Virus record (IMG/VR): IMGVR_UViG_3300044821_000131 | Coordinates: 140,258-204,257 of that record | Length of the DNA stretch: 64,000 nt | Reading direction: 5' to 3' (one strand) | Part shown: piece by piece, positions 2,749 through 64,000 of the stretch | Layout of the letters: each line of letters starts with the position of its first letter | How positions within the stretch are numbered: position 1 is the stretch's first letter | Notes under the pieces: generated by a model | Seen by the model: the letters and a program-made list of their open reading frames with translations, nothing else | Databases searched by the model: none | Told to the model about the DNA's origin: nothing | Position numbers and translations under genes: made by a program

Positions 2749-2751
2749 TTT

Positions 2752-25578: not shown

Positions 25579-28500
25579 CAATCATACTCGACACAACCTC
25601 AAAATACATAGACGTGGTAATGACCGCACCGCCGGCCACGACCAACCCGTCGTTCTTCTCCAGCTACGCCGACAACAACGGCACGACTTTTACGGAAGGA
25701 GGCAACGATGGTGTGCTCAATGGAACTACGCTGGTAACACTGGTTGCCGCACCGGCATCGAGCACGCGCCGGACGGTAAAGAAGCTTGGAATTTATAATG
25801 CTGATACCGCGCCCGTCACAATTACAGTTGCAATAAATGACTCAGCCACTCGTCGTATTTTTGCCAAGGTTACGCTGCAACAAAATGAAACGTGGTTGGG
25901 TGATGTGCAGATGGACGCGAATGGAAACGTGAAGGGGATTGGACCTACTGGCCCTACTGGACCAACTGGTCCAACTGGACCAACTGGTCCTACAGGAGGC
26001 ACGGGTGCAGTTTCAACGGTCGCGGGTCCGACTGGTCCTACTGGTCCGACAGGTCCCACTGGTGCTGCTAGTACCGTGGCGGGACCTACTGGTCCAACTG
26101 GACCTACAGGTCCCACTGGTGCTGCTTCTACTGTTGCGGGTCCGACTGGTCCTACTGGTCCGACAGGCCCAACTGGAGCAGCAAGTACCGTAGCAGGTCC
26201 GACTGGTCCAACCGGACCTACTGGTGCAGCTAGTACCGTAGCCGGCCCAACTGGTCCGACGGGAGCCACTGGACCTACCGGGCCGACTGGATCAGCCGCA
26301 GTCGTAACTGTACAGGTCATTGCCACAGCGGGAAGTACGACCACGCTAACATCTGGAAGTCCTTATCAAACAGATTTTACGGGGACGCTTAATCAGACTT
26401 GTGTTTTACCGAATGCTACGACTTTATCAGTGGGGCAGCGTTACCAAGTAAACAACAATTCTACTGGACTGATTACAGTACAGGTAAATGGTGGAACATT
26501 CTTGGCAACCATAGCTACTGGAATGTCATGGCTAGTTACATTGTTGACCAATGGTACTACTGCTGGTACGTGGGATTTTGATTGGATAGGTAACGTCCAA
26601 GGACGCGGGACTCAAAGTATAGCCACTTCCGGTGGGAGCACACAATTGACAGCGACGAGTCATAGACAGCTTATCTTAACGGGTACGGCTACGCATACCA
26701 TAATACTTCCCGATTGTACTACGCTACCTTTCACGGATTGGTCTTTTGAAATAGACAATCAATCTCCGCTAACCATTGCTGTGCAGTATTTTGGAGGGGC
26801 GGCACTAACGCTTATTACGGGCTACGGGCAGTTAATTTTAAGCTGTAACTCTATCGCCACACAAGCAGGCACTTGGCAATATCAGACGGACCAGCAGATT
26901 TCGGCGGATATTCCGCCAACGCCACAGGTTCTCAACGGACTGGATGTTTGGGGGCATAGTTGGCTGGAGAATCCTTTAACGTCACCAACATTTTCAAGCT
27001 TGGGCACGAATAGTAACGAATTGTTTGGGCGCATATTTGCAACATCGTGTGGTATCCCAGCATCAAGATATATTCAGCACGCCCGTACAGGAGCCATGCT
27101 GGTGGGTGGAACTCGGGCCGCGACAACTGGCGGCGGTAATTTTGCAAAGATGTTGAACGAACTTGTACGTTCAAGGCAAACTCCGCCGTACGTTCGATCA
27201 GGAAATGCGCATCTTATTTGTTGGGGCATTAACGACATTGGGAATAACACGGCGGCGAATCAGGCCAATCTCAGAGTTAGCGCGCAGAACATCTTAACGG
27301 TGCTAATTTCCAAGGCACGTTCGGCAGCGATCTATAACGCCAACCCGACGGGAGCAAACCTTGCATTCGGTGCCAACTGGGTGGCCGCAACTGGTGCCAA
27401 CGATTTTACGTCGGGCTTCGCCCGTCAATGCACGGTGGTAGATTCCGCCGGATCGTCTACTATCACGTTTACAATCCCCATCGGCTATCAAGGCGAACCG
27501 ATTTGTTTCTGCTTGGGCACGCTTTCAGGCGGATCAATCGTGGTTACTTGGGGCGGTGGTGCTGGTATTACTGGCACCACAACCTTGAGCGGTATTGGTT
27601 TGGCAGCAAACGGCGTCATTCTCAAGAGGATCACAACTCTGACCAAGGCGAACGCCGGTCAAACCATAACCTGCGCGGTGACGACCATATCCGCTTCGAC
27701 GGCCTATTTTGACGGGGTATGGATTGAGGCGTTCAAGGCTGTGCCTATCTTAGTGTGTAACTGTCCTCGCCTGCCGGAGCATTTAATTACTTGGGCGAGC
27801 GGAGCAGGCGTCACTACGGGTGTCAACACCAGTTTTACCGACGCTAACGTGCAATTCTCAAACACGGGCGGTTGGTATGACGTAGGAGCCACCCTAAACG
27901 AAACCGATGCGCAAGGCGCGTTTACTGGAGCGACAAATACCATCTCATCCGTCACCAATGCAACCACGGTTGTACTGGGTACGAATGCGGCGGCGGCAAA
28001 AACAAATATCCAATACACAATCCAACGTCGAATTCGAGGTTACTCCTCAAGTCTATATTGGACAACGAATACCAATTTCACCAGCGCGACGAATCTTAGC
28101 CATGCGGCGGCGGATACGGACATCACGAATTGGAACTCGATGATAGCAACTGTCGTGGCTCAGTTCGACTCAATGGTTCAAGTTGTTGATCTGGATGCGG
28201 CTATTGGAGCAGACGCCACCGTGCCTTCAAACGTTTACACATGGTTCTCCATGGATGGAGGTCATCTCAACGCACTTGGGCACATGCGCTGCGCTCAAGC
28301 GGTTATGCTGGCTGCGATTAACTTGATTGCGCCAACAACCGATCCGCAACCATTCGCGAACCTTCAAGAGCAGTCTGTTCCGGTTTATGAGCCGGCAGAG
28401 TACCGGCGCGTGATTCGTACGGGCCAGATTTACCTGCCTGATGGAGCAATCCTTGGTCCGGTGGCAAATTTATACACAGCCGTTCTGGGAGATTGTTTTG

Positions 28501-29006
28501 CATTTCCGTTTTTTGTGACGGAAGCCGCAGAGTTTTGGACAACCGTGTTCATGGATCAGTCAAACGCTGGAACCTCGCAAATGCGTGTAGCGGTATATGA
28601 TGATGTGGGCGGTGGAAATGGGCCGCTGGGTTACCCTAGTTGCGTTCTCATCGACACAGGAGTCGTGGCCATGAACGGTTCGGCGTCGGTAACAAATATA
28701 GCCCCGGCTGGAATAGCTCGAACGATCTATCCGGGACTGAACTGGCTGGTAATCAAATGCGACGTGTTGGGTACAGCATCCACGTTTTACACCATGTTCG
28801 GCACTTCTCTACAATTACCGGGATGGAACGGAGCACACTTGGGCACATCCACAAACTTTCTTCAGCCCATAGCCTACAAGGTAACGGGCGTGGCCGCGGG
28901 TGCATTTCCGGGCGTGTTCCCGACTGGCGGATTACTTGTTGGTTGTAACGTGGGCGCAACTGGCCAGTTTGCTCCCGTTGTAGGCGTAACCCGGACTATT
29001 CAATAA
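25575..29006 (+). CDS. Collagen-like tail fibre 2 with SGNH/GDSL esterase domain
   Basis: ATGA coupling at 25575; short GPT collagen; two TLP-type repeats; SGNH blocks [17 protein letters not shown] and [11 protein letters not shown]. Confidence 0.75.
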
Positions 29007-45108: not shown

Positions 45109-47142
45109 ATGAACATTGCCACACTTTATTCCGCTATGGTCGACCGAATTAACCTGCTCGACCACGCTTACTGGGTGCAGAACGAACCTTTAGTCAGCGA
45201 CCAGCAGTATGACCGAGAAATGCAGTCACTTATAGCGTTCGAAAAGGATCACCCCGATCTCGTATCTGTCAGAAGCCCGACCCAAAGAATTGGTGGCGGA
45301 CTAGCATCTGGTTTCGTGTCCCGACCCCACGTGTTGCCTTGCCTGTCGCTGGATAACGTATTCAAGCCGTCCGATCTGGAACAAAAGATATTGGGCTGGC
45401 ACACAGAATTGGGAATACGCGAAGATATTAAGATGCAGTGCATTGTCGAGCCGAAGATCGACGGCCTGTCTCTGGATCTCAAATATAAGCACGGGGATCT
45501 GGTGCAAGCATTAACCCGAGGCAATGGCACCGAAGGTGATGACGTCACTACGAATGCCAAGACCATCCACAGTATACCGTTTTATGTGCCAGGATTCGGT
45601 AAGGACTCGGACATCCATGTTCGTGGAGAGGTGTTCCTGACTTTCGAGGATTTCAAATTGATTAACGAGCGCCAAGAAACTTTGGGACGCGAGAAGTTCG
45701 CGAATCCAAGAAACGCCGCGTCAGGTTCGATGAAACTACTGGATTCGTTCGAAGTAGCTCAGCGGCGGCTCAGCTTTATGCCGTATCACGTGTTGAACGG
45801 GTGCCATACATTAGTGCCCGTATATCAGGATGAGCTGCATGGATGGTTCAAAGACATGGGATTCAAGGCAGTGCCTTGGTTCAAGGTCGGAGACAACGTT
45901 GAAGATGTAGTGGACTGGGTAATGAAGTTTGAAGCACTACGGCCTACGATGACCTTCCCGGTTGACGGGGCAGTCATCAAACTGAACTATCGTCCTTGTT
46001 GGGACCAATTAACCAATTCGACCCGTGCTGTGCGATGGGGCTATGCCTACAAGTATGCACCTTCGGAAGTTGAAACCGTGTTGAATTCCATAACCGTTCA
46101 GGTAGGACGTACCGGGGCGTTGGCGCCAGTGGCTGAATTGGAACCTGTGGAGATCGATGGCAGCGTCATTGGTCGGGCGTCGTTACATAACTTCGATGAG
46201 ATCGACAGGCTGGACGTTCGTGTGGGCGATACAGTTGTTATAGCGAAACAGGGGGAGATTATTCCTAATGTTGTTCGGGTGGTAAAAGCGAAGCGTAACA
46301 AAAACTGTACAGTTTTTGTTCCACCAGAAGCCTGTCCAATTTGTCAGTCCCCAGTTGAGAAAAAGACACTCAGTGACGGCAAGACACAAAGCGTGGCTAT
46401 TTATTGCAACAATAAACAATGTCCGGCGATTCGCATCGGATCAATTATACACTGGGCGGCCAAGGCTCAGATGGACATTGAGGGCTTAGGAGAATCGTCC
46501 GCAGAGAGCCTCTTCAATCTGTTGCACGTCGACAGCATTGACAAGCTATATGAGCTGACCGTCAAGAGTCTTCGTGGAGTATCTGGCAATGTCTTCGGCG
46601 CCAAGGAGGCTGAGAACCTCTACAACGCGATCCAGGCCAGCAAGGACCGAGGCATGGAAGCAGTACTGGCGGGATTGGGAATCGATCACATTGGTAACAC
46701 GTTGGCCCGAAAGCTTGCTCTTCGCTACGAGGACCTGTGGGCCTTTTTGAATACCGATACTCCGGAATTGCAGAAGCAGGTAGGACCTGTAGTTTTGAAA
46801 TCGCTTGAAGACAATGACGAGTGGATACGCATTATGGTAATGAAACTTGAGAAACACGGTGTCAATTTAAAATCGAAAACGTTTAACCCTGCGGCGGCTT
46901 CTGGAGCGTTGGCCGGAAAATCGATATGCTTTACCGGAACATTAAGCATGGATCGCGATGAGGCGGCACGACTGGCAGAAGCGAAAGGAGCCAAGGTGGT
47001 CAACAGTATAAGCAAGAAACTGTCTTATTTGGTAGTGGGTGACAGCGCTGGCTCCAAGTTGGACAAGGCCAAGGCTTTGGGAACGGTACAGATCATTGGA
47101 GAAGAAGACTTCTTGAAACTAATAGGCAAAACGGATGAGTAA
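45109..47142 (+). CDS. ligA: NAD-dependent DNA ligase
   Basis: EPKIDGLSL adenylation motif, FANPRNAASGS, VDGAVIK, QVGRTGALAPVA, CPIC/CNNKQC zinc finger, HhH repeats, C-terminal BRCT (CFTGTL...AKVVNSISKKLSYLVVG). Confidence 0.97.
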   Translation: MNIATLYSAMVDRINLLDHAYWVQNEPLVSDQQYDREMQSLIAFEKDHPDLVSVRSPTQRIGGGLASGFVSRPHVLPCLSLDNVFKPSDLEQKILGWHTELGIREDIKMQCIVEPKIDGLSLDLKYKHGDLVQALTRGNGTEGDDVTTNAKTIHSIPFYVPGFGKDSDIHVRGEVFLTFEDFKLINERQETLGREKFANPRNAASGSMKLLDSFEVAQRRLSFMPYHVLNGCHTLVPVYQDELHGWFKDMGFKAVPWFKVGDNVEDVVDWVMKFEALRPTMTFPVDGAVIKLNYRPCWDQLTNSTRAVRWGYAYKYAPSEVETVLNSITVQVGRTGALAPVAELEPVEIDGSVIGRASLHNFDEIDRLDVRVGDTVVIAKQGEIIPNVVRVVKAKRNKNCTVFVPPEACPICQSPVEKKTLSDGKTQSVAIYCNNKQCPAIRIGSIIHWAAKAQMDIEGLGESSAESLFNLLHVDSIDKLYELTVKSLRGVSGNVFGAKEAENLYNAIQASKDRGMEAVLAGLGIDHIGNTLARKLALRYEDLWAFLNTDTPELQKQVGPVVLKSLEDNDEWIRIMVMKLEKHGVNLKSKTFNPAAASGALAGKSICFTGTLSMDRDEAARLAEAKGAKVVNSISKKLSYLVVGDSAGSKLDKAKALGTVQIIGEEDFLKLIGKTDE

Positions 47143-47626
47143 GAAACCAACCATTACTTCGGTGATAGATCCATTGTGTGAATGCGACAATTGTGGGCAT
47201 CGCTGTGGTTGTAGCAAGCTGGCTCAAATTCACAATCTGTTGGATCGACTCGACGTGGGTGGGGAGATGCCGGCAGGTGATTGTCCCAAGTGCGGATGTT
47301 TCAGTTATTTGGTCAAGCCAGAGGTTGTTGTTAGCTTCACACGTCAAGCTGGAGAAGATATTAAAAAACTTGATGGCTGCGTTACCCACTATACCAAAGA
47401 TCTTCGTGGTCTCTTGGAAGAACAGCTGGTAAAGGAGATCAATAAAAATCCTATCTTGGCACGAATGAACAAGATGCCGAGATGCTCCAGCGCAATCGAT
47501 AGATTTGGTACCTACAAAACGACGGTGGTGTTCGAAACGGACTTAGATTGGATCACCATGCAGCAAGTGCTGCAGTGGACTTATGACACATTTGGCATGA
47601 CCGGGTCGTTTGAAAAATATGAGTGA
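47135..47626 (+). CDS. Hypothetical protein with Cys clusters
   Basis: CECDNCGHRC and CPKC. Confidence 0.5.
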   Translation: MSKKPTITSVIDPLCECDNCGHRCGCSKLAQIHNLLDRLDVGGEMPAGDCPKCGCFSYLVKPEVVVSFTRQAGEDIKKLDGCVTHYTKDLRGLLEEQLVKEINKNPILARMNKMPRCSSAIDRFGTYKTTVVFETDLDWITMQQVLQWTYDTFGMTGSFEKYE

Positions 47627-48794
47627 CAGACCTCACATTGAACCCAATATGAAGATTAAACTAGGATGGGTGTCCGATAGTCATCTGGGCTATTCGCAGT
47701 ACGGGTCGTCGAAACGTAGACGTGACTTCGCGTTGGGGCTGAAGAATGCAGTCGACGACATGTTGAATAATAAGGTCAATGCTATTATTCACACAGGCGA
47801 CATGTTCAACTCGAATCGGCCTTCCGCGGAAGATGTGCGGGACCTTCAACATATCCACAATCTGCTGATCGCTAAAGGAACATTCCTCTACACGATTGAC
47901 GGCAATCACGATCACACCAATCCGCCTTGGCCCGAAGTACTGATTCCCAACTCCCGGGGAGGAATCGTACTGATCAGCACCTACCCAAAGGTCGTGATCG
48001 GCGATCTAGTGCTACGCGGCTATTCTTCCATGAGCAAAGAGGCGCTGCTCAGTCGGTTCCAGGAGGATGACATGTCGGGTATCGACGTGTTACTATTGCA
48101 TCAACCGATAAAGGAATTCTGTGGGTTTCCGAGTCCAAATGCGCTCGCTATCGACGATGTCCCAGACATATTTGAGTTAACTGCAGTAGGTGATATTCAC
48201 GTGATGGATATTCGTCAACGGCCGAGCGGAGGTTGGATTGGCTATCCTGGGTCCACCGAGATGTGTAGTTCGTCTGAGTGTCCAGACAAGTATTGGATCG
48301 AGCTTAACTTCGGCGACCGTAAATTGGTGTCTTACGATCCTCACAAAATTCGTACACGACCTGTATTACACTGGTTAGTAAACACGGAGGCAGAGTTGAC
48401 GGCGAAACTGGATGAGTTTGATCGATTGGAAACGGAACTCAAGAAGACCGACCCGCGCGAACCCATGCTGTACGTGAAGTTCCCGACCAGCCTGTCCGAC
48501 GTGATCGCCCGCGTACGTCAGAAATTGGATCCAGACAAATACATCGTTGTTCTGCAACCTATATATCTGAACCCGGAATCAGCTACAGGTGTGATAAATC
48601 CGCTGGCGGTGCAGGCAGAAGACAAGGATATCAGTGTGCAGGACCTCTTGAACGCGAAGGTACCGACGGAAGATGGGCTGTATCAGATAGCGTCTCAGAT
48701 GTTGAATCCGGATATTGATGCGGGTAAGGCGTTGAAAGAGTTCGTAGAGGCACGCCTGGCCGCGATTGAGGCCAATGCAACCGAAAGTTCTTGA
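47619..48794 (+). CDS. Mre11/SbcD-like nuclease
   Basis: SDSHLG, HTGDMF, DGNHD, LLLHQ, GDIH and YPGS metallophosphoesterase motifs. Confidence 0.92.
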   Translation: MSDRPHIEPNMKIKLGWVSDSHLGYSQYGSSKRRRDFALGLKNAVDDMLNNKVNAIIHTGDMFNSNRPSAEDVRDLQHIHNLLIAKGTFLYTIDGNHDHTNPPWPEVLIPNSRGGIVLISTYPKVVIGDLVLRGYSSMSKEALLSRFQEDDMSGIDVLLLHQPIKEFCGFPSPNALAIDDVPDIFELTAVGDIHVMDIRQRPSGGWIGYPGSTEMCSSSECPDKYWIELNFGDRKLVSYDPHKIRTRPVLHWLVNTEAELTAKLDEFDRLETELKKTDPREPMLYVKFPTSLSDVIARVRQKLDPDKYIVVLQPIYLNPESATGVINPLAVQAEDKDISVQDLLNAKVPTEDGLYQIASQMLNPDIDAGKALKEFVEARLAAIEANATESS

Positions 48795-49071
48795 ACACGT
48801 AGGATTCCTAAACGTATTCCTTACCGACCCAGAAATCATCGTTGAGTTGGTTGATGATGAAGACCACGACTTGGGAATGTTCGGATGCTGTTGTTGTTCG
48901 GAAAAGGAACTCATGGAGTTTGTGCTTTTCCGGGCAGCTATACAGTGCGGTTGTGGTCGTTTCGATTCTCAATTGGAGCAGGTGACTGCGGTTGTTAGAG
49001 GACTGGGTCAGGAGTGGATATTAAATTACAAGCATGAAAAACTTAAATACGAAATAGAGCGACATGTCTAA
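48775..49071 (+). CDS. Hypothetical protein
   Basis: ~98 aa ORF overlapping both neighbours. Confidence 0.4.
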   Translation: MQPKVLEHVGFLNVFLTDPEIIVELVDDEDHDLGMFGCCCCSEKELMEFVLFRAAIQCGCGRFDSQLEQVTAVVRGLGQEWILNYKHEKLKYEIERHV

Positions 49072-49648
49072 AAACAAACCAATGACTAATTACGACGAAT
49101 ATAGACTGAATGACGACAAGCATTGGGAGTGGCACACGACATTTATTGGCCGTCTGATGCAGCACAATTATCGTGTCTATCACATTCTGGACGGCGTATT
49201 CAAAATCGCACCGAATTTAGGTGCCATTGTTGAGATCGGTACTGGTTGTGGGGCGCTTACCACGTATCTAGGACTGTGGGGCTTACATCTAAACATCCCT
49301 GTGCTGACGGTCGATAATGTGAGATCTACAGATACGGATGCATTCCTGCAACGCCTCGGTGTGACTGTACTGGATGGCGATGTATTTTCCACAGAGGTCT
49401 ACCGAAAGATAAAAGAATTCGTTGGCCAGCGTCCCGTATTTTTATTGTGTGATGGTGGGGCTAAACAACGAGAGTTTGACACTTGGGCACGACTACTTGT
49501 ATCTGGATCATTCATAGCGGCGCACGATCTAGGTCACGAGTTTTCGGTTGAGAATATATCGGAATGGACTCGAACCCTAGTTACTCCCGTTATGGAAGAA
49601 AGGTGGAACGAGATGAATGCTCAAATTGCAATATTTAAAGTTAATTAA
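49064..49648 (+). CDS. Class I SAM methyltransferase, CmcI-like
   Basis: IVEIGTGCGALTTYL, VLTVD, LLCDGG and IAAHD motifs. Confidence 0.7.
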   Translation: MSKNKPMTNYDEYRLNDDKHWEWHTTFIGRLMQHNYRVYHILDGVFKIAPNLGAIVEIGTGCGALTTYLGLWGLHLNIPVLTVDNVRSTDTDAFLQRLGVTVLDGDVFSTEVYRKIKEFVGQRPVFLLCDGGAKQREFDTWARLLVSGSFIAAHDLGHEFSVENISEWTRTLVTPVMEERWNEMNAQIAIFKVN

Positions 49649-49653
49649 ACCGC

Positions 49654-52248
49654 ATGATAATCGAAAAACTAATTGGTGACAACTGGGGTAAACACCGGCA
49701 CTTCGAATTTGAGAGCAACGGAAGCATCGTCGGTGTCGTCGGACCAAACGGGTCTGGCAAATCAACCGTACTGGACCTGGTCGAATTCCTGATAACCGGG
49801 CAGACCCGTGATAATCTGGATTCGTATGTCCGCAATCAGCAAGGCAACGGCGGCGGCTCCATGACCTTCGTGAAGAACGGTCAACGGGGAACCATCATGC
49901 GCCAGATCGGCTCCACCAAGAAGCGCGAACTCGTTTGGGGCGATCAGACGTTGAAGTCAGTCAAAGACGTGGACAAGCTGATGTCGGAAATATTCGGTGC
50001 TGATAAAAAGGCCTTGGCTAACTCGGTGTTCGTAAATCAAGGCACACTGCAAGATATCCTTTTTAAGGACGGCGTGGATAGAAGTCGAGCGTTCCTGCAG
50101 TTGGTCAATTTATCCTTCTGCGAGGCCCGGTCGCACATGGTGAATAGCCAGATCCAAATGATTTCTGGCACTGTGGTGGATCTAACCCCAGCACGGGATG
50201 AGGCGTCTGCTGCTCGTATGGACGCCTTGGGAACCATGAATCGCAAAAACATGGAGCTGTTGGCCTGCCCGAATCATGAGGCCGAGTTGACATACCTGCA
50301 CAATCTGTCCAAGGCCAACACGGAGCTCAATCTGCTGCAGCAACAGATCGGTGAGGCCCTTGTACAGAAGCAGAGCAAGCAAGCCGAGTTGGAGGTCAAA
50401 CTGGCAGGGGCCACGTTGGACCAACGTATTGCGGAGCTGGAGGAGACGCGACAGAATTTAGAGTCGGATAGGACCAAGTCCGACGATTATGGAAAAATCT
50501 TGGCTGAGTTAACGCATTACACCAGAGTGAGAACTGAGATTGATTGCATCACCCGACGCCAGATACAGGTAATGTCTGACTTGAGTTATGTTAATGCGGA
50601 TAGCTATACGGTGCAGCAGATCGAAGGTTTCATCAAAGACCTGAATGATGACATCAAGCTGCACGACAATCGGAAATCCATAACGGAAACGATCGCAGGC
50701 ATCGAATCCAACTTGACGCACTTGCACAATCAGTTGGGAATATTTCCGGTGCCTCCGGCGAGTCAAGATCAGCTGAATAAAGTGCAGCACGATTTGCAGT
50801 TGAAACGATCGTCGGTATCACAACTGTCACAGTACACAAGACTACAGGCCAAGATCAAAGGTCGGGTGAGTGCGAAGTCCGAATGTACCGGTGATTGTCC
50901 GGAATGTGGTCTCACCCTGATGGATATAAATCAATTAAACGATGAGTATCTTCAAGGTAAGACGGCAGAGATCGAGCTTTTGACTTCCGAGATAAAGGTT
51001 CTTGAGAAGCAACAGTCGGACTGGCTATCCGCATTGGCAGAATATAACCGAAAGAAAAATAATCTTGAAGGAAGCATCGAAAGTCAGAAACAGGCGAAGT
51101 TGAGAGAGCAGCAACGTCTGGCTGACATCAAGACAAAGTTTGACTACGAGGTGGCGAAAGAAGACGTACGAGCTTGGTCTGACATCCGGGAAAAGACAAA
51201 GGAACTTTTAACTGAGCAGAGCAATCTGGATACCCAGAAAGCGACGGCTATAAAATTACTGGACACGTTCCCATTGGGAGCGTCTAACTGGGAACGACGT
51301 TACGAATTTTCCGCCGCGGGACACAGTGATCTGTCCAGCCGCACCACCCACTGGTCCAATCTGTACAATCAGCGCAATCAGCAGTTGAGTCTGTCCAACA
51401 ACTTGGCCAGCCAAATCGAAACCATAACCCATAGTCTGGCCCAGATGCAAACGCGAGTCACCGAGGCGTCGGCGATCTTTAACGCCCCGGCGCCTGGTGT
51501 ACTGTCAGAGAAGTTGCAAGATACTAGTGTGTCCATGACCCAGGTGGAATCTGAACTGTCAGCCGCGGAGCACCACCGTATAAGTCTAAAGGGAGAAGTG
51601 AAAACAGCCGTAGAGGCATATCAGGCGGCCAATGTTCGCTTTCAAGACTTGGAACAACGAATTGCCCAGAACCGAGCAAAGCTAGACCTGTTAAATGATC
51701 TGCGGCGGTTAAAAGACCTGCTGGGTAACGACGGCATACCCATGATGTTTGTGCGGCACAAGTTTGAGAAGTTGGCGCAGCATACACAGGATGGGTTGCA
51801 GCAGATGAATGCGAACTTCTATATATTCATTGACAAGGATAAGGATTTGGAGTTCCTATTCCATCGTCTGGATGAGCCGACGAAGTTCGACCTGCCGATG
51901 TGCAAGTTGTCAGGCGGTCAACGCGTTCGCCTGTGCTTGGCATTTCTGATGGCTTTGCAGAAGACGCTGATCAAAGACATAGGTCTTCTGGTGTTGGATG
52001 AGCCGCTAGGCGGATTGGACATAAATGGTGTGGAACAAGTTATTGAATTTCTGAGTTTGATGAAACAGGAATTGAAGAATGCCGAACATCAAATCTGGAT
52101 CGTGGACCACAATTTCGCGATCGAGCAAGCATTGGAAAAAGAATTGAAATTAGGACAAGAACAAAATAATCATGAACAAGAAAACGCAGATCCAGCAGAA
52201 CAAGAAGTTGTCGCCGAAAGAATTGATCACGTTCATACGGAAGCCTGA
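49654..52248 (+). CDS. Rad50/SbcC-like SMC ATPase
   Basis: GPNGSGKST Walker A, VNQG Q-loop, coiled coils with central CPEC zinc hook, LSGGQ signature, LVLDEP Walker B, IVDH. Confidence 0.93.
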   Translation: MIIEKLIGDNWGKHRHFEFESNGSIVGVVGPNGSGKSTVLDLVEFLITGQTRDNLDSYVRNQQGNGGGSMTFVKNGQRGTIMRQIGSTKKRELVWGDQTLKSVKDVDKLMSEIFGADKKALANSVFVNQGTLQDILFKDGVDRSRAFLQLVNLSFCEARSHMVNSQIQMISGTVVDLTPARDEASAARMDALGTMNRKNMELLACPNHEAELTYLHNLSKANTELNLLQQQIGEALVQKQSKQAELEVKLAGATLDQRIAELEETRQNLESDRTKSDDYGKILAELTHYTRVRTEIDCITRRQIQVMSDLSYVNADSYTVQQIEGFIKDLNDDIKLHDNRKSITETIAGIESNLTHLHNQLGIFPVPPASQDQLNKVQHDLQLKRSSVSQLSQYTRLQAKIKGRVSAKSECTGDCPECGLTLMDINQLNDEYLQGKTAEIELLTSEIKVLEKQQSDWLSALAEYNRKKNNLEGSIESQKQAKLREQQRLADIKTKFDYEVAKEDVRAWSDIREKTKELLTEQSNLDTQKATAIKLLDTFPLGASNWERRYEFSAAGHSDLSSRTTHWSNLYNQRNQQLSLSNNLASQIETITHSLAQMQTRVTEASAIFNAPAPGVLSEKLQDTSVSMTQVESELSAAEHHRISLKGEVKTAVEAYQAANVRFQDLEQRIAQNRAKLDLLNDLRRLKDLLGNDGIPMMFVRHKFEKLAQHTQDGLQQMNANFYIFIDKDKDLEFLFHRLDEPTKFDLPMCKLSGGQRVRLCLAFLMALQKTLIKDIGLLVLDEPLGGLDINGVEQVIEFLSLMKQELKNAEHQIWIVDHNFAIEQALEKELKLGQEQNNHEQENADPAEQEVVAERIDHVHTEA

Positions 52249-52402
52249 AGTCGTTTGGTATGGACCGCACGCTTGTGAACGATGTGCTTGTAACGTCGTA
52301 AAATCATCGATTGAGTCCGGTGGTATAACGTTGGACTTCGAGTTTGATTCGCACTATCCGAATCATAAGTGGACTCAACATCAATGTGGTCAGCCGAAAT
52401 AA
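52172..52402 (+). CDS. Small Cys/His-containing hypothetical protein
   Basis: HACERC...HKWTQHQC; overlaps the Rad50 3' end by 77 nt. Confidence 0.45.
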   Translation: MNKKTQIQQNKKLSPKELITFIRKPEVVWYGPHACERCACNVVKSSIESGGITLDFEFDSHYPNHKWTQHQCGQPK

Positions 52403-52405
52403 CTT

Positions 52406-52903
52406 GTGTTAATTCTAGCGCGCCTGCGTCTAAACACGCCGATGCTTGGTGATATGACGCCAGGCCGAGACGGCATAAGACGCTTTCGAAAAGAGAGTTC
52501 TATGGTTCTCGTGAACGAGCAAGCGTGGCGCGGTCAGTTTGAACAGGCGGCGCGTGACGCTCGTATGCTGGTTAACATTAATGCAATCCTGCCACCGAGA
52601 ACCATACTGCCGGCCAGCTATCACATTTACACACGGCATTACTCACAGGTAAAAACGGATTACTTCGAATCGTTCCGAAAGGGTACCATACTGACCATGA
52701 TCTTCAGGATTGAGGAAACCATGGCCAAAGCACCGACCTTAGACCAGTTCACCACACTGTTATCGCTGGTAGGTACTTGGTTAGGGCTATCGCCTTGGGG
52801 TAGTAAATTTAATTTCGGACGATTCGAAGTATTGGACACACACGTGGTTGAGGAGAAAAATAATGAACAAAGCACCATTCAAACTGATTGTCAGTCGGAC
52901 TGA
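52406..52903 (+). CDS. Stand-alone RAMP superfamily (Cas7/Csm3/Csf2-like) protein
   Basis: RLRLNTPMLG (motif I), VLVNEQAWRGQFEQAA (SxxKG-like helix), FESFRKGTILTMIFRI, Gly loop LVGTWLGLSPWGSKFNFGRFEV; GTG start. Confidence 0.65.
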   Translation: MLILARLRLNTPMLGDMTPGRDGIRRFRKESSMVLVNEQAWRGQFEQAARDARMLVNINAILPPRTILPASYHIYTRHYSQVKTDYFESFRKGTILTMIFRIEETMAKAPTLDQFTTLLSLVGTWLGLSPWGSKFNFGRFEVLDTHVVEEKNNEQSTIQTDCQSD

Positions 52904-53144
52904 AGACAACGCACGACTGCATCTACTGATTCTTACCGATACTGAAGTCTTGCTAAACTTGGCCAACGCCGCGCAAGCACAAGACCTTGCTGGACACGTC
53001 ATCGATCTTGGAAAAGATTCGGACACAGGAATAGAGTCGATCTTACTGGAGGTTAAGTCTTCGGGAACACCCAACGGTAAGACAGCCTATTTCCGCGAGG
53101 TAGCACAACACGCAGATCGTATTGTGCATGTAGACACGCTATGA
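52863..53144 (+). CDS. Hypothetical protein
   Basis: 93 aa ORF between the RAMP and helicase genes. Confidence 0.45.
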   Translation: MNKAPFKLIVSRTEDNARLHLLILTDTEVLLNLANAAQAQDLAGHVIDLGKDSDTGIESILLEVKSSGTPNGKTAYFREVAQHADRIVHVDTL

Positions 53145-54598
53145 TCCGAATTACTTGGTACTCCGGAGAACTTGTAGTCTCAGACTCAGACCGCGCACCT
53201 GACGACGCCTGTCCCATTGAGTCGAAGTTGTATTACACGCACAAGAGCTTGGTACAGAATGAAGAGAAGCCTTGGATCCGAGATGTGACCAAAGAGAAGG
53301 TGAGCTTGGTACGGCCGCTCATGGGACAGCCGTGTCGAACGTTTGTATGTTATCAAGGACTTCTGGATCGGGTGCTCGACGCCTGCAAGAAAAAGAGACT
53401 GGCCTACGAGTTGATCGACGCGCGGGATCCGATGCCGGCGCCGCAGGTCAAGAACATGAAGGGATTCAGGAACGGGCAGTTCACCGCGGTGATTAATTTT
53501 CTGTCACCGAACCGCTCTGGAATATTAAAATGTCCTACCCGCTGGGGAAAAACGGTTGCACTTGTTAACGTAATCCGAGCCTATCCAAATACCCCGACAA
53601 TATTGGCGGCGCCTGGTGTTGACCTGATGCGGCAGCTGGTCGACGAATTGAAGGCCGCGTTGCCCGGGAGAACCATCACGGGACTGTTCACTGGATCGAA
53701 AGACAAGAATCAGTCGCAGGACATAACCGTGTGCAGTCTGGACTCGTTGGAAAAAATAAACCCAGATCACGTGCGGCTGCTGCTGATAGACGAACCACAC
53801 GCGATCGCAACGCCCTCCCGAATGTTAAATGTGGCCAAATTTAAGCACGCGCGCATCTACGGGTTCGGTGCAACAGTTGAAGGTAGATTCGATGGTGCCG
53901 ATATAATAACGGAAGGTTTGGTTGGTCCGGTCTTGTACGAGAGAACATTTCAACAGGCTGTGGCCGATGGAGCTATCTGTCCACTTGTAGTATACATGTT
54001 GAAACTGGAGTTCCCGACGTTCGAGTGTCAGAGCCGTGATCATGCCTATCGCTACCTTGTGTACAAGAATAAAGATCTGTGTGCCATCGTTCAAGAGATA
54101 GTGGCTTCCAAGATACCTGAGGATTGGCAGACTCTAATATTTGCCGATCAACAGAAGCAGGTGGATCTGATCAATCAGTTCGTCGAGTCTGGCGTCGGAG
54201 CGGTGGCGTCGCGGATGAATACGAAGGAGCGACGGGAAATGTTTGCGGCGATGAAAGCTGGAACGATCAAGCGCTGTGTGTCCACTAGCATCTACGCACA
54301 AGGTGTAACATTTCCGGACCTGCGGGTGATCATCAATACGTCGGGCGGTGGAGGCTCTATTACGGGTACGCAGAAGCCTGGACGTCTGGCGCAGATACGG
54401 CCAGGTAAGAAAGCCGGATATCTGGTGGATTTCCTGCTGGAACCGAAGGACTGGCATTTACGCGAGAATCAGAATTACGGACCTTTGGACAAGTGGTCAT
54501 CGGTGGTGTTCGATTGTCGTAATCGAATGAAAGTATATCAAGAAAACGGCTACGATGTACGCATTGTACGTTCGGTAGATGAAATCAATTTTGAATAA
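53141..54598 (+). CDS. Superfamily 2 helicase (UvsW/RadD-like)
   Basis: CPTRWGKT Walker A, LLIDEPH Walker B, GATVEG motif III, TSIYAQGVTFPDL motif V, QKPGRL motif VI. Confidence 0.9.
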   Translation: MIRITWYSGELVVSDSDRAPDDACPIESKLYYTHKSLVQNEEKPWIRDVTKEKVSLVRPLMGQPCRTFVCYQGLLDRVLDACKKKRLAYELIDARDPMPAPQVKNMKGFRNGQFTAVINFLSPNRSGILKCPTRWGKTVALVNVIRAYPNTPTILAAPGVDLMRQLVDELKAALPGRTITGLFTGSKDKNQSQDITVCSLDSLEKINPDHVRLLLIDEPHAIATPSRMLNVAKFKHARIYGFGATVEGRFDGADIITEGLVGPVLYERTFQQAVADGAICPLVVYMLKLEFPTFECQSRDHAYRYLVYKNKDLCAIVQEIVASKIPEDWQTLIFADQQKQVDLINQFVESGVGAVASRMNTKERREMFAAMKAGTIKRCVSTSIYAQGVTFPDLRVIINTSGGGGSITGTQKPGRLAQIRPGKKAGYLVDFLLEPKDWHLRENQNYGPLDKWSSVVFDCRNRMKVYQENGYDVRIVRSVDEINFE

Positions 54599-54600
54599 TT

Positions 54601-55077
54601 ATGGGCGATAGATTTTCGACGACTTTGGAAATAGGTGGTAAGTTGGAACGGTCGAAGTTGCATGAGTTGGTAGAAGCACTACGGTCCGATACTTACGGCC
54701 TTGACTGGGGTGATCCGGGCGCTGAGACCGAGTTCAGGGAATACATAGAACACGCATCTGAGAATACAGGCATTTTAAGTTTTCACTGCAGTGAATTGTC
54801 TCTTAGCAGTACGGCTACAACTGATTTTTGTGAAGAGAACAGACTGTCATATGTTACTTACCAAGAAGGAAAGCACGAATATGATGGCGATATAAGTTGG
54901 TGGCGTCCGGGAATGAAAATACCAAGAATTCACATGGCAGATCATGCAGGATCGAGGCCGGTTTTGGGTTTAAGTGAGCTGAAAAACTATAAGACCCGAG
55001 GTCTGACCTTGGCTGGTGTTATTAAAAACCTGCGGGCTGTTCCGCCCAAATTGCCGGTGTTTAAATTAATCCAATGA
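54601..55077 (+). CDS. Hypothetical protein
   Basis: 158 aa ORF. Confidence 0.55.
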   Translation: MGDRFSTTLEIGGKLERSKLHELVEALRSDTYGLDWGDPGAETEFREYIEHASENTGILSFHCSELSLSSTATTDFCEENRLSYVTYQEGKHEYDGDISWWRPGMKIPRIHMADHAGSRPVLGLSELKNYKTRGLTLAGVIKNLRAVPPKLPVFKLIQ

Positions 55078-55436
55078 CCACATTGTCTATAAAGGAACTT
55101 AGGCCCGACAGCATTCCGGAAGGAATGAAAGCGGTGGCCGATATCGCTACGCGGCACCTGACTGAAACTGACGGTAATCTCTTACGATGGAGTAAAACTA
55201 GCGCAAGAATTATAGGCTATGTGGGACCTACAGAATACGGATGGATGCTGGAGACAGCGCAGTACGATGAGGCTATGATGGACGCAGACTTGGGTCTCGC
55301 GGAAGACATCAAACGCAGCGGCATGTCAAAAACGTTTGTGGCCATAATGTCGGCTTTGTACAGACAGAACATCTACTATGTGTGCTTCGATACCGACGGG
55401 TACGAACTCGCCGAGTTTCCTATATTCGACTGGTAA
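55074..55436 (+). CDS. DUF5983-like hypothetical protein
   Basis: IATRHLT...TEYGW...VCFDTDG...FPIFDW pattern. Confidence 0.5.
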   Translation: MTTLSIKELRPDSIPEGMKAVADIATRHLTETDGNLLRWSKTSARIIGYVGPTEYGWMLETAQYDEAMMDADLGLAEDIKRSGMSKTFVAIMSALYRQNIYYVCFDTDGYELAEFPIFDW

Positions 55437-56752: not shown

Positions 56753-57328
56753 ATGGACCCAGATATTCAGAACATCGCGTCCGAGATAAAAAAATACTTC
56801 TACGACTTCAAACGGCAACAAATAGGAAAAGCCTATTCCCCGTCCGAACGTATGCGTCGACCAGCCATCTGGGCCGCCGCAGCAGAGCTCTGCGTAGAGT
56901 TGAAGGCCGATCCGTTTGCCTTCGTCAAAGCCGCCTTCATGTTTAATAACGTTCCCGGTGGTCCGTACCCGACACAGATCACCGGGCGTGCTGCCGATAA
57001 ATGGTATCGTCAGTACGTGCAGCTGAACGACGCAAAAGGTCTGACGCTGCTGGAGGTAACGGAGAAGGAGGTCAAGAACGTCATGTCGCACGCGTTGCAG
57101 GTCGTCGCCAGTCAAAGTCGGCGTTCATGGAAAGATTTGTTGATGGACGCCTATGAAGTACGGCAGGATATTGTGCCGGCCTACGCCAGAATTTTCATGT
57201 TTCCGACTGATAAGGATATTTTAAACCAGTGGGGCAAATTGGCCACTGAAGAGTTAAACAGCAATCCCAAGCTGATCGAATGCGTTCAGCGTCTGGGATA
57301 CAATACGGATTTTACTAATGGCTACTGA
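56753..57328 (+). CDS. Hypothetical protein
   Basis: 191 aa ORF. Confidence 0.55.
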   Translation: MDPDIQNIASEIKKYFYDFKRQQIGKAYSPSERMRRPAIWAAAAELCVELKADPFAFVKAAFMFNNVPGGPYPTQITGRAADKWYRQYVQLNDAKGLTLLEVTEKEVKNVMSHALQVVASQSRRSWKDLLMDAYEVRQDIVPAYARIFMFPTDKDILNQWGKLATEELNSNPKLIECVQRLGYNTDFTNGY

Positions 57329-59583: not shown

Positions 59584-61104
59584 ATGGGTAGTATTACACA
59601 AGACTTTAGACGGGCACCGTTGCCTCCAGATGCGTCCGAAGTACGAAAAGACCACACCGGTATAGAGCGGGAAATCTTCTTCGGCGCCGTAGCCTCCTAC
59701 AATTTTTACAAACTTGTCCGCAATAACGTTTGCCCATACGACGCAGAAAAAAGGACATGCCGACCCGATTTTAGCATCGAGCGCTATAACATCGCGTGGG
59801 CCTTCATTGTCGCGTACTGGCAACGTTTTGAGAATATAACACTTCAGCGCGATCTAAGCATTCCCACCGAGACGCTGTGTGCCTTCGTTATTGATTGTGC
59901 CAACCGTTCCGGCTTGGTCGTGGACGTAGCCAAACAGATCACCGACGAAATCGTCGAAGAAGTCGGCTACACGGCAAATCTTACCTACGAGTCCCTGAAA
60001 GCTCTGGCCGAGAGCTCCGCGTTCAACGAGTGGCTGGAGTCCAGGCTATTGTCGCAGGTTACGGGCACCATTGCGGCGCAGAAGAACTTGGGCTATCTGA
60101 CCATGGACACGTTGGAGGAAGCCGTGGCGAAGGCCCGGAGGGCCATTACACCGGTAAAGAATGACTATTTCGTCAACGGAGCCAACTTCCTCTTCGGTAA
60201 ACGGAAAATACGTCCCAGCGTTCCCATAACGGCATTCCCAAATCTGTCCCGCGCGCTGGGCGGCGGCCTGTTCTGGGGAGAAGCCACAATGGTAGCCGGA
60301 ATCAATGCCGGAGGAAAAACGATAGTTACCATGCAGCTTGCTCGAGACTTTGCCTATCAAAGTATTAATACTGTGGTATTTACTACAGAGCGTAAACCGG
60401 AGGAATTGTTTGTTCGTTCTGTGAGTGAGTTATTGAATGTGGATATAGGCCGTCTCATGACGGTTCCGGCAACGGTGAATCAGGAAGTGGAGATAAATTA
60501 CATTCCAGATTGGGTGTGGTCCCACCCGGGAGATGCTGCGCGCTTGGAGCGAATGTACGATGTCTACAGTCAGCATTTACTGTTCATTGATTGGAGTAAG
60601 GGTCAAGGCGCTACCATAAGCGAGAGTTTTGAACAGGTTATGCAGCAGATAGAACAAACCGGATGGATGCCACAAATAGTGATATTCGACTGGATAGGTG
60701 GAGGATTAGACGTTATCGAGAATAAGGACTGGCTTCGGATGTATTACCAGTCGGCCGCAGACTGCCTGATCAATCATAGCAAACGCACGAACCGACATGT
60801 GATCATGACGGCACAATTGAACAAGGAGAAGGTCAAGCCTAGTACTAACTTTGTGGATATGAGCATGTTATCGGAATGTTTGACGATGACTAACAACTTG
60901 ACCAATTTTATTGGTATTACGGCTAAGCGGGATCAGAATCTGAAACCGGGGGCTGCGACGGTGCAGAAGTTTCAGAATCTGTGTGCGGCCAAAGCGACGC
61001 ACGGGCCAGGTGGCATCATACCGGTGGAGGCACAGTTCAATGTACAAAGGTTTATGGAACGTAACGATGCGGCTGAGAAGATGTTGAAGACTGGGGGTGG
61101 TTAA
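59584..61104 (+). CDS. DnaB-like replicative helicase
   Basis: GEATMVAGINAGGKT Walker A, VVFTTE, VIFDWIG Walker B, MTAQLNK. Confidence 0.88.
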   Translation: MGSITQDFRRAPLPPDASEVRKDHTGIEREIFFGAVASYNFYKLVRNNVCPYDAEKRTCRPDFSIERYNIAWAFIVAYWQRFENITLQRDLSIPTETLCAFVIDCANRSGLVVDVAKQITDEIVEEVGYTANLTYESLKALAESSAFNEWLESRLLSQVTGTIAAQKNLGYLTMDTLEEAVAKARRAITPVKNDYFVNGANFLFGKRKIRPSVPITAFPNLSRALGGGLFWGEATMVAGINAGGKTIVTMQLARDFAYQSINTVVFTTERKPEELFVRSVSELLNVDIGRLMTVPATVNQEVEINYIPDWVWSHPGDAARLERMYDVYSQHLLFIDWSKGQGATISESFEQVMQQIEQTGWMPQIVIFDWIGGGLDVIENKDWLRMYYQSAADCLINHSKRTNRHVIMTAQLNKEKVKPSTNFVDMSMLSECLTMTNNLTNFIGITAKRDQNLKPGAATVQKFQNLCAAKATHGPGGIIPVEAQFNVQRFMERNDAAEKMLKTGGG

Positions 61105-63649: not shown

Positions 63650-64000
63650 ATGAACCTATATCTAAAAGATTCAGACGGTAATTGGAAATTACACAGCTAC
63701 GAAACGTTATCCGATTTGGCCGGGGAGTTTGCCAAACGTAACATAAAAATCGGCAATCGCGTGGCGATCGGCAGTGACGTGACGATCGGCAATTTCGTGA
63801 AGATCGGCGATTACGTGACGATCGGCAATCGCGTGACGATCGGCAATTTCGTGAAGATCGGCGATTACGTGACGATCGGCGATTACGTGACGATCGGCAA
63901 TCGCGTGGCGATCGGCAATCGCGTGACGATCGGCAATGGCGTGACGATCGACAATTACGTGACGATCGGCGATGACGTGACGATCGGCAATCGCGTGACG
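63650..64000 (+). CDS. Left-handed beta-helix hexapeptide-repeat protein (truncated by window end)
   Basis: Not in the ORF track; reads MNLYLKDS... then IGNRVA IGSDVT IGNFVK IGDYVT... to the window end. Confidence 0.85.
   Translation, partial: MNLYLKDSDGNWKLHSYETLSDLAGEFAKRNIKIGNRVAIGSDVTIGNFVKIGDYVTIGNRVTIGNFVKIGDYVTIGDYVTIGNRVAIGNRVTIGNGVTIDNYVTIGDDVTIGNRVT
63749..64000 (+). repeat. 18-nt tandem repeat, 14 units in the window
   Basis: atcggc(a/g)at...gtg(acg/aag/gcg) units encoding hexapeptides. Confidence 0.9.

What the first reader, a model, noticed from the sequence alone, without database searches (positions are those of the whole stretch)
52406..52903. Orphan minimal RAMP (Cas7-like) protein in a phage, with no CRISPR array or other cas genes nearby
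Seen: the 165-aa protein carries the RAMP motifs in the canonical order. These are strand+TPxxG (RLRLNTPMLG), an SxxKG-like helix (NEQAWRGQFEQAA), FE...GT+strand (FESFRKGTILTMIF) and the terminal Gly loop (GTWLGLSPWGSKFNFGRFEV). No cas1, cas3, cas8 or cas10 gene and no repeat-spacer array is visible in 64 kb. Established: RAMPs are RRM-fold RNA-binding subunits that polymerise on guide RNAs in class 1 CRISPR complexes. Inference: this could be a non-CRISPR RNA-guided or nucleic-acid-binding filament protein, possibly akin to the phage stand-alone RAMP systems (VIPR-type, from memory) that use short tandem-repeat guides. It could also be a CRISPR-interference decoy.
Basis: partly seen in the sequence, partly recalled or inferred. 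Interest (0 to 1): 0.85.

Follow-up and report, generated by a model that had tools for sequence, protein, structure and literature searches.

The report
Solo RAMP in phage replication operon
A small phage protein has the fold of the CRISPR subunits that coat guide RNA and is distantly related to the viral Vipr proteins, yet it has no guide-RNA array near it and is always found beside an XPB-like helicase in the phage's DNA replication and repair operon, so it is probably doing a different job from CRISPR or VIPR.

Summary
The ORF at 52406..52903 (+, GTG start, 165 aa) is real. It belongs to a family of at least 341 clusters, all metagenomic or viral. A profile comparison links the family to the SUSP1 Vipr clade (hhalign 91.8%, E 7e-7; shuffled controls at most 1.3%). 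It is not a canonical VIPR system. No period-5 (GGY/NN or other) array, CRISPR array or cas gene occurs in the 64 kb window, in about 70 related loci, or in about 86% of a 69.7 kb relative genome. Three of the four residues with which Vipr reads GG are replaced, and the Vipr helical bundle is absent. It is not an orphan either. The gene sits in a tight operon: SbcD, SbcC, RAMP, XPB-like SF2 helicase, an unknown protein, DnaB-like helicase, primase, PolA. All 42 helicase-anchored viral loci that have upstream DNA carry it, and it co-diverges with the helicase (r = 0.80). Best reading: a single-stranded nucleic-acid-binding partner of the helicase in phage replication and recombination. Its function is untested. 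I rate it a new variant of a known kind.

The parts
52406..52903 (+). RAMP-like (Vipr-related) protein of 165 aa; the core is residues 1-147 and the C-terminal tail is poorly conserved
   Evidence: ORF. Family alignments. AF2 pLDDT 94.8. Foldseek hits are RAMPs. hhalign to the Vipr clade.
53141..54598 (+). XPB/Rad25-like SF2 helicase (ResIII + Helicase_C); the invariable downstream partner of the RAMP-like gene
   Evidence: Pfam and PHROG hits. Best PDB matches are archaeal XPB, E 7e-15. 42 of 42 helicase-anchored loci with upstream DNA carry the RAMP-like ORF. Co-divergence r = 0.80.
49654..52248 (+). SbcC/Rad50-like SMC ATPase; the usual upstream neighbour
   Evidence: Pfam SMC_N and AAA_23, PHROG_77 SbcC-like. 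Lies directly upstream in most loci.
47610..48794 (+). SbcD/Mre11-like metallophosphoesterase
   Evidence: Pfam Metallophos. Conserved cluster C3.
45109..47142 (+). NAD-dependent DNA ligase
   Evidence: Pfam DNA_ligase_aden, OB and BRCT. The same gene occurs in L023/L024 and L010.
52172..52402 (+). 76-aa CxxC small protein between SbcC and the RAMP gene; a lineage-specific insertion
   Evidence: 56% identical ORF at the same place in L007. Absent from most other loci.
52863..53144 (+). 93-aa protein (ATG start with a GAGGAG ribosome-binding site) that overlaps the RAMP gene's 3' tail; a lineage-specific insertion
   Evidence: Sequence. 43% identical ORF in L007. Absent from most other loci.
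56753..57328 (+). Conserved unknown protein of about 190-230 aa (cluster C4); in relatives it lies between the SF2 helicase and the DnaB-like helicase
   Evidence: Cluster C4 in 10 loci. No Pfam hit.
59584..61104 (+). DnaB-like replicative helicase
   Evidence: Pfam DnaB_C. Same position in relatives.

Best explanation
The gene encodes a genuine minimal RAMP: one RRM core, a short beta-hairpin where Cas7 and Vipr carry the thumb, and a C-terminal glycine loop. It is a distant homolog of the viral Vipr proteins. It is not the effector of a guide-array system. It is a fixed component of the phage's DNA replication/recombination operon (SbcD, SbcC, RAMP, XPB-like helicase, unknown protein, DnaB-like helicase, primase, PolA).

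The mechanism is inferred, not shown. I propose that it binds single-stranded nucleic acid (ssDNA, an RNA primer or transcript, or the displaced strand of an R-loop or bubble) through the canonical RAMP surface of helix 1, hairpin and Gly loop, possibly as an oligomer. I propose that it works as the partner of the XPB-like translocase, for example by holding the strand that the helicase opens during end processing, fork restart or initiation. Recognition would be non-programmable or would depend on a fixed motif.

Shown here: the fold, the homology, the conserved surface elements, the obligate linkage to the helicase, and the absence of arrays. Inferred: nucleic-acid binding, oligomerisation, physical partnership with the helicase, and the process served.
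For: Fold and homology:
- AF2 pLDDT 94.8.
- 94 PDB hits at E<=1e-3, and the top 50 are all CRISPR RAMPs.
- A bona fide Vipr model run as a control gives the same hit list with weaker scores.
- hhalign to the Vipr clade gives 91.8% and E 7e-7; controls give at most 1.3%.

Conserved residues:
- They concentrate on helix 1, the hairpin and the Gly loop. These are the elements that contact RNA in Vipr and in CRISPR RAMPs (paper 10.64898/2026.04.26.720927).

Genomic context:
- Genes abut by 3-15 bp in most loci.
- The module contains SbcD, SbcC, ligase, DnaB-like helicase, Toprim primase, UDG/exo-PolA and a RecA-like protein.
- Distant family members (about 25% identity) still sit directly upstream of the SF2 helicase, even where SbcC has been displaced by inserted genes.
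- 42 of 44 helicase-anchored viral loci carry the gene, and the two exceptions have no upstream DNA.
- Pairwise identities of RAMP and helicase correlate, r = 0.80, Mantel 0/999.
- Its divergence from the window copy is like that of SbcD, SbcC and the helicase.

No guide array:
- Searches found none. The positive control was recovered.
Against: - No experiment, and no oligomer or complex prediction, was possible here. Nucleic-acid binding is inferred from fold and conservation only.
- An invariant Glu (E88) on the hairpin is unusual for a purely binding surface and could point to catalysis.
- 140 kb of this phage's own contig was not available to scan for a distant guide locus.
- The VIPR paper states that some VIPR types carry helicase accessory genes. 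I could not see its type list, so this family might already be filed there.
- Co-divergence could reflect shared genome history rather than physical partnership.
- One locus (L010) has the gene next to a ligase and an AAA ATPase, without the SbcC or SF2 neighbours.
Confidence: 0.5

Rival explanations
1. It is the effector of a divergent VIPR-type (or other RNA-guided) system, and the helicase is its accessory (vap-like) gene. The guide RNA would be encoded elsewhere in the genome, or would lack a detectable period-5 signature.
For: - Profile homology to Vipr.
- W131 aligns with Vipr W178, which stacks on G2.
- The VIPR paper reports types whose accessory genes are helicases or nucleases, and some loci with degenerate repeats such as NNNNG.
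- Non-canonical fixed trinucleotides have been reported (10.64898/2026.10.21.760802).
- 140 kb of this contig was not examined.
Against: - No period-5 array of any composition in the 64 kb window, in about 70 related loci (more than 0.9 Mb in total), or in about 86% of a 69.7 kb relative. Periods 4-8 were also negative.
- There are no intergenic flanks; the genes abut.
- H17, R138, D177 and R179 of Vipr align with non-equivalent residues here; R138 aligns with an invariant Glu.
- The helical bundle that holds the skipped target base is absent.
- The gene is universal and co-diverges within a core replication operon. An inter-phage weapon would be expected to be variably present.
Confidence: 0.2
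2. It is a catalytic RAMP, a metal-dependent or Cas6/Csm3-like ribonuclease. It would cut RNA in RNA-DNA hybrids, for example to remove primers or process R-loops, alongside the helicase.
For: - Nearly invariant acidic E88 (134/137), with R77 and S129.
- Several RAMPs (Cas6, Csm3, Cmr4) are ribonucleases (established knowledge).
- No RNase H or 5' flap nuclease was recognised in the module in the loci annotated here. This is weak evidence, because many of the ORFs have no assigned function.
Against: - The Csm3/Cmr4 catalytic Asp lies in the loop after strand 1. Position 16 here is not conserved across the family.
- E88 may be structural.
Confidence: 0.12
3. It is a protein-only adaptor or regulatory subunit of the helicase or of SbcCD. 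It would have kept the RAMP fold but would no longer bind nucleic acid.
For: - Obligate linkage with the helicase.
- The protein is very small and lacks the Vipr helical bundle.
Against: The strongest conservation lies exactly on the Gly loop, helix 1 and the hairpin, which are the nucleic-acid-binding elements of RAMPs. An adaptor would be expected to conserve a protein interface instead.
Confidence: 0.1
4. It is an anti-CRISPR decoy, a Cas7 mimic that poisons assembly of host class 1 effector complexes.
For: It has a RAMP fold and is carried by a phage.
Against: - It is no closer to any one Cas7 type than Vipr is.
- The family is conserved in a fixed operon position across phages that share only about 25% identity, whereas decoys are usually host-specific and sporadic.
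- It sits in the replication module, not in an anti-defence island.
Confidence: 0.03

Closest known systems
Vipr, the RAMP of VIPR systems (Escherichia phage SUSP1; bioRxiv 10.64898/2026.04.26.720920 and 10.64898/2026.04.26.720927; PDB 36pp)
   Same: - Viral, stand-alone, single-RRM RAMP of under 200 aa.
- Same order of elements: b1, insertion, a1, hairpin, b, a2, Gly loop, b4.
- Profile-profile homology over the whole length.
- The Gly-loop Trp is kept, W131 aligning with W178.
- It is the only RAMP found by sequence profile in the PDB, though the hit is not significant on its own (E 0.39).
   Different: - No vrRNA or period-5 array, and no long intergenic flanks.
- The positions aligned with H17, R138, D177 and R179 are different residues here.
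- The two-helix bundle (Vipr residues 27-56) is replaced by a short beta insertion carrying a conserved R-R-F.
- The hairpin is shorter.
- It is embedded in a core replication/recombination operon and is universal within its phage lineage, rather than sitting in a two-gene accessory locus.
CRISPR Cas7-family subunits (type VII Cas7, Csm3, Cmr4, the Cas7 domains of gRAMP, Csf2)
   Same: Best structural matches, with Foldseek E 1e-6 to 1e-4 and TM 0.5-0.62. RRM core plus Gly loop.
   Different: - 9-15% sequence identity.
- No Pfam RAMP hit for any of 137 family members.
- No CRISPR array and no other cas genes.
- Smaller, about 147 aa of core.
RAMP-plus-helicase pairings in CRISPR (type I Cas7-Cas3, type IV Csf2-DinG) and VIPR types with helicase accessory genes
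   Same: A RAMP gene is invariably linked to an SF2 helicase gene. This suggests the RAMP marks or holds a strand on which the helicase acts.
   Different: - The helicase here is XPB/Rad25-like, with no HD nuclease domain and not DinG-like.
- No guide RNA is evident.
- The setting is a replisome and SbcCD operon.
Archaeal XPB-Bax1 helicase-nuclease pair
   Same: An XPB-family translocase is encoded next to a dedicated small partner and close to nucleases (for the XPB relationship; the Bax1 pairing is established knowledge).
   Different: The partner here has a RAMP fold, not a Bax1 nuclease fold. The nuclease nearby is SbcCD.

Membership tests
RAMP superfamily | RRM (ferredoxin-like) core, b1-a1-b2-b3-a2-b4 | tested here: met
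   AF2 model with pLDDT 94.8 has this order of elements. The Foldseek PDB top 50 hits are all RAMPs, best E 1.2e-6. BFVD top hit is a viral RAMP, E 3e-8.
RAMP superfamily | Glycine-rich loop between helix 2 and the last strand | tested here: met
   G123, G127, G132 and G138 are invariant or nearly so, within the motif GxxxGLSPWGSKFGYGRF at residues 123-140. The motif lies between a2 (112-126) and b4 (140-147).
RAMP superfamily | Thumb: a beta-hairpin that inserts into the bound nucleic acid | tested here: inconclusive
   The hairpin at 73-90 aligns with the Vipr thumb (122-141) in hhalign but is shorter.
RAMP superfamily | Binds RNA | not testable with these tools
   Needs EMSA, RIP-seq or a structure.
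Pfam RAMP (PF03787) and other Cas Pfam/NCBIfam/PADLOC models | Sequence match to a curated model | tested here: not met
   No hit for the protein in Pfam, PHROGs, NCBIfam or PADLOC. None of the 137 family members hits a RAMP Pfam at E<=1. Only one marginal PHROG hit.
VIPR system | Vipr-homologous protein | tested here: met
   hhalign of A2 against the SUSP1 clade A3 gives 91.8%, E 7.3e-7, 152 columns. Reversed and shuffled controls give at most 1.3%.
VIPR system | vrRNA: 9-16 tandem pentanucleotide units (YNNGG or another fixed-trinucleotide/NN unit) in the intergenic DNA flanking vipr | tested here: not met
   Regex and information-content period-5 scans gave these results:
- Window maximum 3.59 bits, against 3.3-3.6 for shuffles and 5.9 for SUSP1 vrRNAs.
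- 24 RAMP-anchored loci were negative.
- 49 more loci, 509 kb in total, were negative.
- About 86% of a 69.7 kb relative was negative.
- Single-fixed-base runs occur at chance level.
The genes abut, so there is no flanking intergenic DNA.
VIPR system | Residues that read GGY (SUSP1 H17, R138, D177, W178, R179) | tested here: not met
   In the hhalign alignment (residue list):
- R138 aligns with E88 (Glu in 134/137).
- D177 aligns with P130.
- R179 aligns with G132.
- H17 aligns with a variable position.
- Only W178 is kept, as W131 (Trp or Phe in 132/137).
The mapping depends on the alignment.
VIPR system | Alpha-helical bundle that holds the skipped target base (K33) | tested here: not met
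   The Vipr control model has helices 27-36 and 43-56. The window protein has only short strands at 13-35.
VIPR system | Minimal accessory locus (vipr + vap) | tested here: inconclusive
   An SF2 helicase always follows the gene, and the paper lists helicase vaps. However, the pair lies inside a conserved replisome and SbcCD operon. The paper's list of types was not available.
Class 1 CRISPR-Cas | CRISPR array and further cas genes (cas1/2, cas5, cas6, cas8/10, cas3) | tested here: not met
   No array. No Cas Pfam family among 55 window ORFs. The helicase is XPB-like and has no HD domain.

The most novel reading that the evidence does not exclude
RAMPs have a third, guide-independent role. In a broad lineage of uncultured phages (contigs of 21-212 kb), a minimal Vipr-like RAMP is a constitutive replication/recombination factor that acts with an XPB-like helicase. 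It might, for example, coat an RNA or DNA strand to stabilise or resolve R-loops or bubbles at origins, stalled forks or SbcCD-processed ends. If so, generic strand-coating in viral DNA metabolism could be the ancestral RAMP activity from which programmable VIPR and CRISPR effectors evolved.
Probability: 0.3. Interest if true: 0.85.

Novelty: new variant of a known kind. Interest (0 to 1): 0.62.

Why it matters
RAMPs have been known only as guide-RNA-binding subunits of CRISPR effectors and, since 2026, of viral VIPR systems. This family has at least 341 clusters at 50% identity and appears in no curated family library I could search. It was also absent from the GenBank phages and the GTDB genomes I could search. 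It shows the same fold and a Vipr kinship, yet it has no array and is hard-wired to an XPB-like helicase in a replication/repair operon.

If it binds nucleic acid without a programmable guide, two things follow. It would widen what RAMPs do, and it would bear directly on the proposed virus-first origin of CRISPR effectors. If it does use a hidden guide, it would be a VIPR type with a new RNA architecture and a helicase effector. Both outcomes can be tested with simple biochemistry in E. coli.

Tried and rejected
**Annotation by curated libraries**
- Pfam, PHROGs, NCBIfam and PADLOC gave nothing for the protein or for 137 relatives.

**Relatives in cultured phages, plasmids and genomes**
- megablast and tblastn of three family members and of the helicase against GenBank phages and PLSDB gave no match.
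- GTDB genomes gave none.
- All database members come from JGI, ENA or Logan metagenomes.

**vrRNA search**
- Regex scans used YNNGG, NNNGG, YNNNG and NNNNG. An information scan that ignores base composition used periods 4-8. All were negative or at chance level.
- A 13-unit NNNNT run in L033/L034 lies inside a small minus-strand ORF and was rejected.

**The 18-bp tandem array at the window end**
- I considered it as a possible guide array. It was rejected because it encodes hexapeptide (beta-helix) repeats of an ORF that starts at 63651.

**RAMP-helicase fusion**
- The long 'helicases' in L020 and L025 suggested a fusion. They are intein-containing helicases, and the RAMP ORF is separate.

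**P0095**
- This 4488-aa protein with 12 matched stretches is a low-complexity repeat protein. It gives no domain hit to the family HMM and is spurious.

**Steps that failed or were limited**
- Walking along a contig with exact-pattern scans extended the sequence by only about 1 kb. I used the look-up of encoding contigs instead.
- The supplementary tables of the VIPR paper, which hold the type lists, are not available.
I re-ran it with the 99%-identical P0161.

Full report
**1. Observation**

The ORF at 52406..52903 (+) is a 165-aa reading frame with a GTG start, 4 nt after the stop of a 76-aa ORF. A database gene call began at Met13. The first 12 residues are conserved in homologs that start at the same column, so the GTG start is preferred.

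A word-indexed search found 12 relatives. A full HMMER scan with their profile found 341 representative clusters at E<=1e-3, of which 216 were at E<=1e-10. Nearly all are 140-200 aa long.

- L14-G15.
- R25-R26-F27.
- W41 and A48.
- R77.
- F87-E88 (Glu in 134/137).
- G93.
- The loop G123...G127-x-S129-P-W131-G132-x-K-F-G-Y-G138-R139-F140, in which G123 and G138 are 137/137.

**2. Fold**

AlphaFold2 on that alignment gave pLDDT 94.8 and pTM 0.85. The elements run b1 (2-9), a short beta insertion, a1 (38-51), hairpin (73-78 and 84-90), b (95-102), a2 (112-126), Gly loop, b4 (140-147). The C-terminal tail after residue 150 has low confidence.

Foldseek against the PDB returned 94 hits at E<=1e-3. 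The top 50 are all CRISPR RAMP chains: type VII Cas7, Csm3, Cmr4, the Cas7 domains of gRAMP/Cas7-11, and type IV Csf2. The best has E 1.2e-6 and TM 0.61.

Against predicted viral structures, the best hit is annotated 'Cas system-associated RAMP superfamily protein' from an uncultured siphovirus, E 3e-8.

As a yardstick I modelled a protein 99% identical to SUSP1 Vipr (pLDDT 95.3) and ran the same search. It hits the same Csm3 and type VII Cas7 set, with weaker scores (best E 6e-5; 37 hits at E<=1e-3). The window protein is therefore at least as RAMP-like as a proven Vipr.

**3. Relation to VIPR**

VIPR is real. Two 2026 preprints describe Vipr as a roughly 20 kDa single-RRM RAMP. It polymerises on vrRNAs made of 9-16 YNNGG units that are encoded in the intergenic flanks of vipr, usually with one accessory gene.

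A profile of the window family against all PDB sequences gave SUSP1 Vipr (36pp) as the only RAMP hit. It aligned over the Gly loop, but at a non-significant E of 0.39.

Profile-profile comparison with a 40-sequence alignment of the SUSP1 Vipr clade gave 91.8% probability and E 7.3e-7 over 152 columns, from b1 to b4. The same comparison with the window family's columns reversed or shuffled gave scores of at most 18.7 against the real 49.6, and probabilities of at most 1.3%. I accept distant homology.

The functional details do not carry over. Vipr reads the two guanines with H17, D177 and W178 plus the thumb residue R138, and R179 helps hold the Y. In the alignment, only W178 is kept, as W131. 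R138 aligns with the nearly invariant E88, D177 with P130, and R179 with G132. This mapping depends on the alignment.

The two-helix bundle of Vipr (residues 27-56), which holds the skipped target base, is absent here.

**4. No guide array**

Regex scans (YNNGG x4 or more, NNNGG, YNNNG, NNNNG) and a period-5 information scan that ignores base composition recover all four SUSP1 vrRNAs at 5.2-5.9 bits. The results elsewhere were as follows.
- The 64 kb window peaks at 3.59 bits, the level of shuffled sequence (3.3-3.6).
- Nothing was found in 24 loci retrieved through the RAMP.
- Nothing was found in 49 further loci totalling 509 kb.
- Nothing was found in about 86% of a 69.7 kb contig and 88% of a 42 kb contig carrying a family member.
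- Periods 4, 6, 7 and 8 were also negative apart from coding periodicity.
- Runs with a single fixed base occurred at chance level.

Non-canonical VIPR repeats reported elsewhere (GAC/NN, CAC/NN and others, about 10 units) would have scored about 6 bits and been detected.

The other searches of the window were also negative:
- Rfam, tRNA, TRF and direct-repeat searches found no RNA gene and no CRISPR array.
- 55 window ORFs hit no Cas Pfam family.

**5. Context**

The window is the last 64 kb of a 204,257-bp IMG/VR viral contig. It contains collagen-like tail fibres and virion proteins.

The gene lies within this run of genes:
- NAD-dependent ligase (45109..47142).
- SbcD-like phosphoesterase (47610..48794).
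- Methyltransferase-like protein.
- SbcC-like ATPase (49654..52248).
- 76-aa protein.
- RAMP.
- 93-aa protein.
- SF2 helicase (53141..54598).
- Further on, a DnaB-like helicase (59584..61104).

Clustering the neighbours across 24 loci shows a conserved order: C5, SbcD, (ligase), SbcC, RAMP, SF2 helicase, C4, DnaB-like helicase, an HTH protein, Toprim primase, UDG/exonuclease-PolA. In one relative a RecA-like protein follows further downstream.

In most loci the SbcC stop, the RAMP gene and the helicase start are only 3-15 bp apart. The two small ORFs flanking the RAMP gene in the window are shared only with the closest relative, L007.

Distant family members (about 25% identity) still sit immediately upstream of the SF2 helicase, even where four other genes separate them from SbcC. 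The helicase is closest to archaeal XPB/Rad25 (E 7e-15).

I then retrieved 44 viral loci through the helicase alone. 42 of them carry a RAMP-family ORF upstream on the same strand (E 1e-8 to 1e-62). The other two begin at the helicase and have no upstream DNA.

Pairwise identities of RAMP and helicase across 37 distinct loci correlate with r = 0.80, and no Mantel permutation out of 999 reached that value. Median identity is 26% for the RAMP and 42% for the helicase. Divergence from the window copy is similar for the RAMP, SbcD, SbcC and the helicase.

The gene is therefore a vertically inherited, universal member of a replication/recombination operon. Its tightest link is to the XPB-like helicase. 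It is not a sporadic accessory locus.

**6. Mechanism**

Shown here:
- A RAMP fold with conserved helix 1, hairpin and Gly loop.
- Homology to Vipr.
- Obligate genetic coupling to an XPB-like helicase, and usually to SbcCD.
- No array.

Inferred: the protein binds single-stranded nucleic acid on the canonical RAMP surface, possibly as an oligomer, and acts with the helicase during replication, restart or end processing, without a programmable guide (confidence about 0.5).

Rivals:
- A VIPR-type effector with an unrecognised or distant guide (0.2).
- A catalytic RAMP using E88 (0.12).
- A protein-only adaptor (0.1).
- An anti-CRISPR decoy (0.03).

**7. Novelty**

The fold class and the idea of viral solo RAMPs are known. 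The new elements are the absence of an array, the loss of the GG-reading residues and the helical bundle, and the fixed place in a replisome and SbcCD operon beside an XPB-like helicase.

The family has no curated model in the libraries I could search. It is absent from the GenBank phages I could query and from one genome per GTDB species.

I could not check whether the VIPR authors' seven types already include it, because the supplement is not held. I rate it a new variant of a known kind, with interest 0.62.

Noticed in passing
window 63651-64000 (runs off the window and contig end): An ORF made of hexapeptide (left-handed beta-helix type, IGNxVxIG...) repeats. It explains the 18-bp DNA tandem repeat of 14 or more copies at 63695-64000. 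The array is coding, not an RNA array.
   Followed up: yes
window 22129-29006: Two very long collagen-like tail-fibre ORFs with nested 9, 57 and 114-bp repeats. The two ORF predictions overlap by about 650 nt, probably because the repeats extend the ORF artificially.
   Followed up: partly
L020 8455-10794; L025 135-2699; also L027-L035: The XPB-like helicase of some relatives carries an intein just after the Walker A GKC/GKT. Other replication genes of the 69.7 kb relative also carry inteins or homing-endonuclease domains.
   Followed up: partly
window 55074-55436: A DUF5983-domain protein (Pfam E 4e-16) sits two genes downstream of the helicase. Homologous ORFs (cluster C10) occur at a similar place in L007 and L012.
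   Followed up: no
L001 (SUSP1) 483-3595 compared with window 45109-52903: The SUSP1 VIPR locus lies directly downstream of the phage DNA ligase gene, and the window's RAMP gene is also a few genes from a DNA ligase. This may be coincidence, or a hint that Vipr-like genes were originally part of replication modules.
   Followed up: no
L035 12094-13213: A 1.1 kb stretch with no called gene in the 69.7 kb relative. It could be an origin or a regulatory or ncRNA region. It shows no period-5 signal.
   Followed up: partly
window 52172-52402 and 52863-53144: Two small genes flank the RAMP gene: one of 76 aa with CxxC, and one of 93 aa. They are conserved in the closest relative L007 (56% and 43% identity) but absent from most other loci. 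Their function is unknown.
   Followed up: partly
L010 6991-10705: The one locus where the RAMP-family gene is not flanked by SbcC and the SF2 helicase. Its neighbours are a NAD ligase, a 316-aa unknown protein, a 228-aa unknown protein and a 522-aa AAA ATPase.
   Followed up: no
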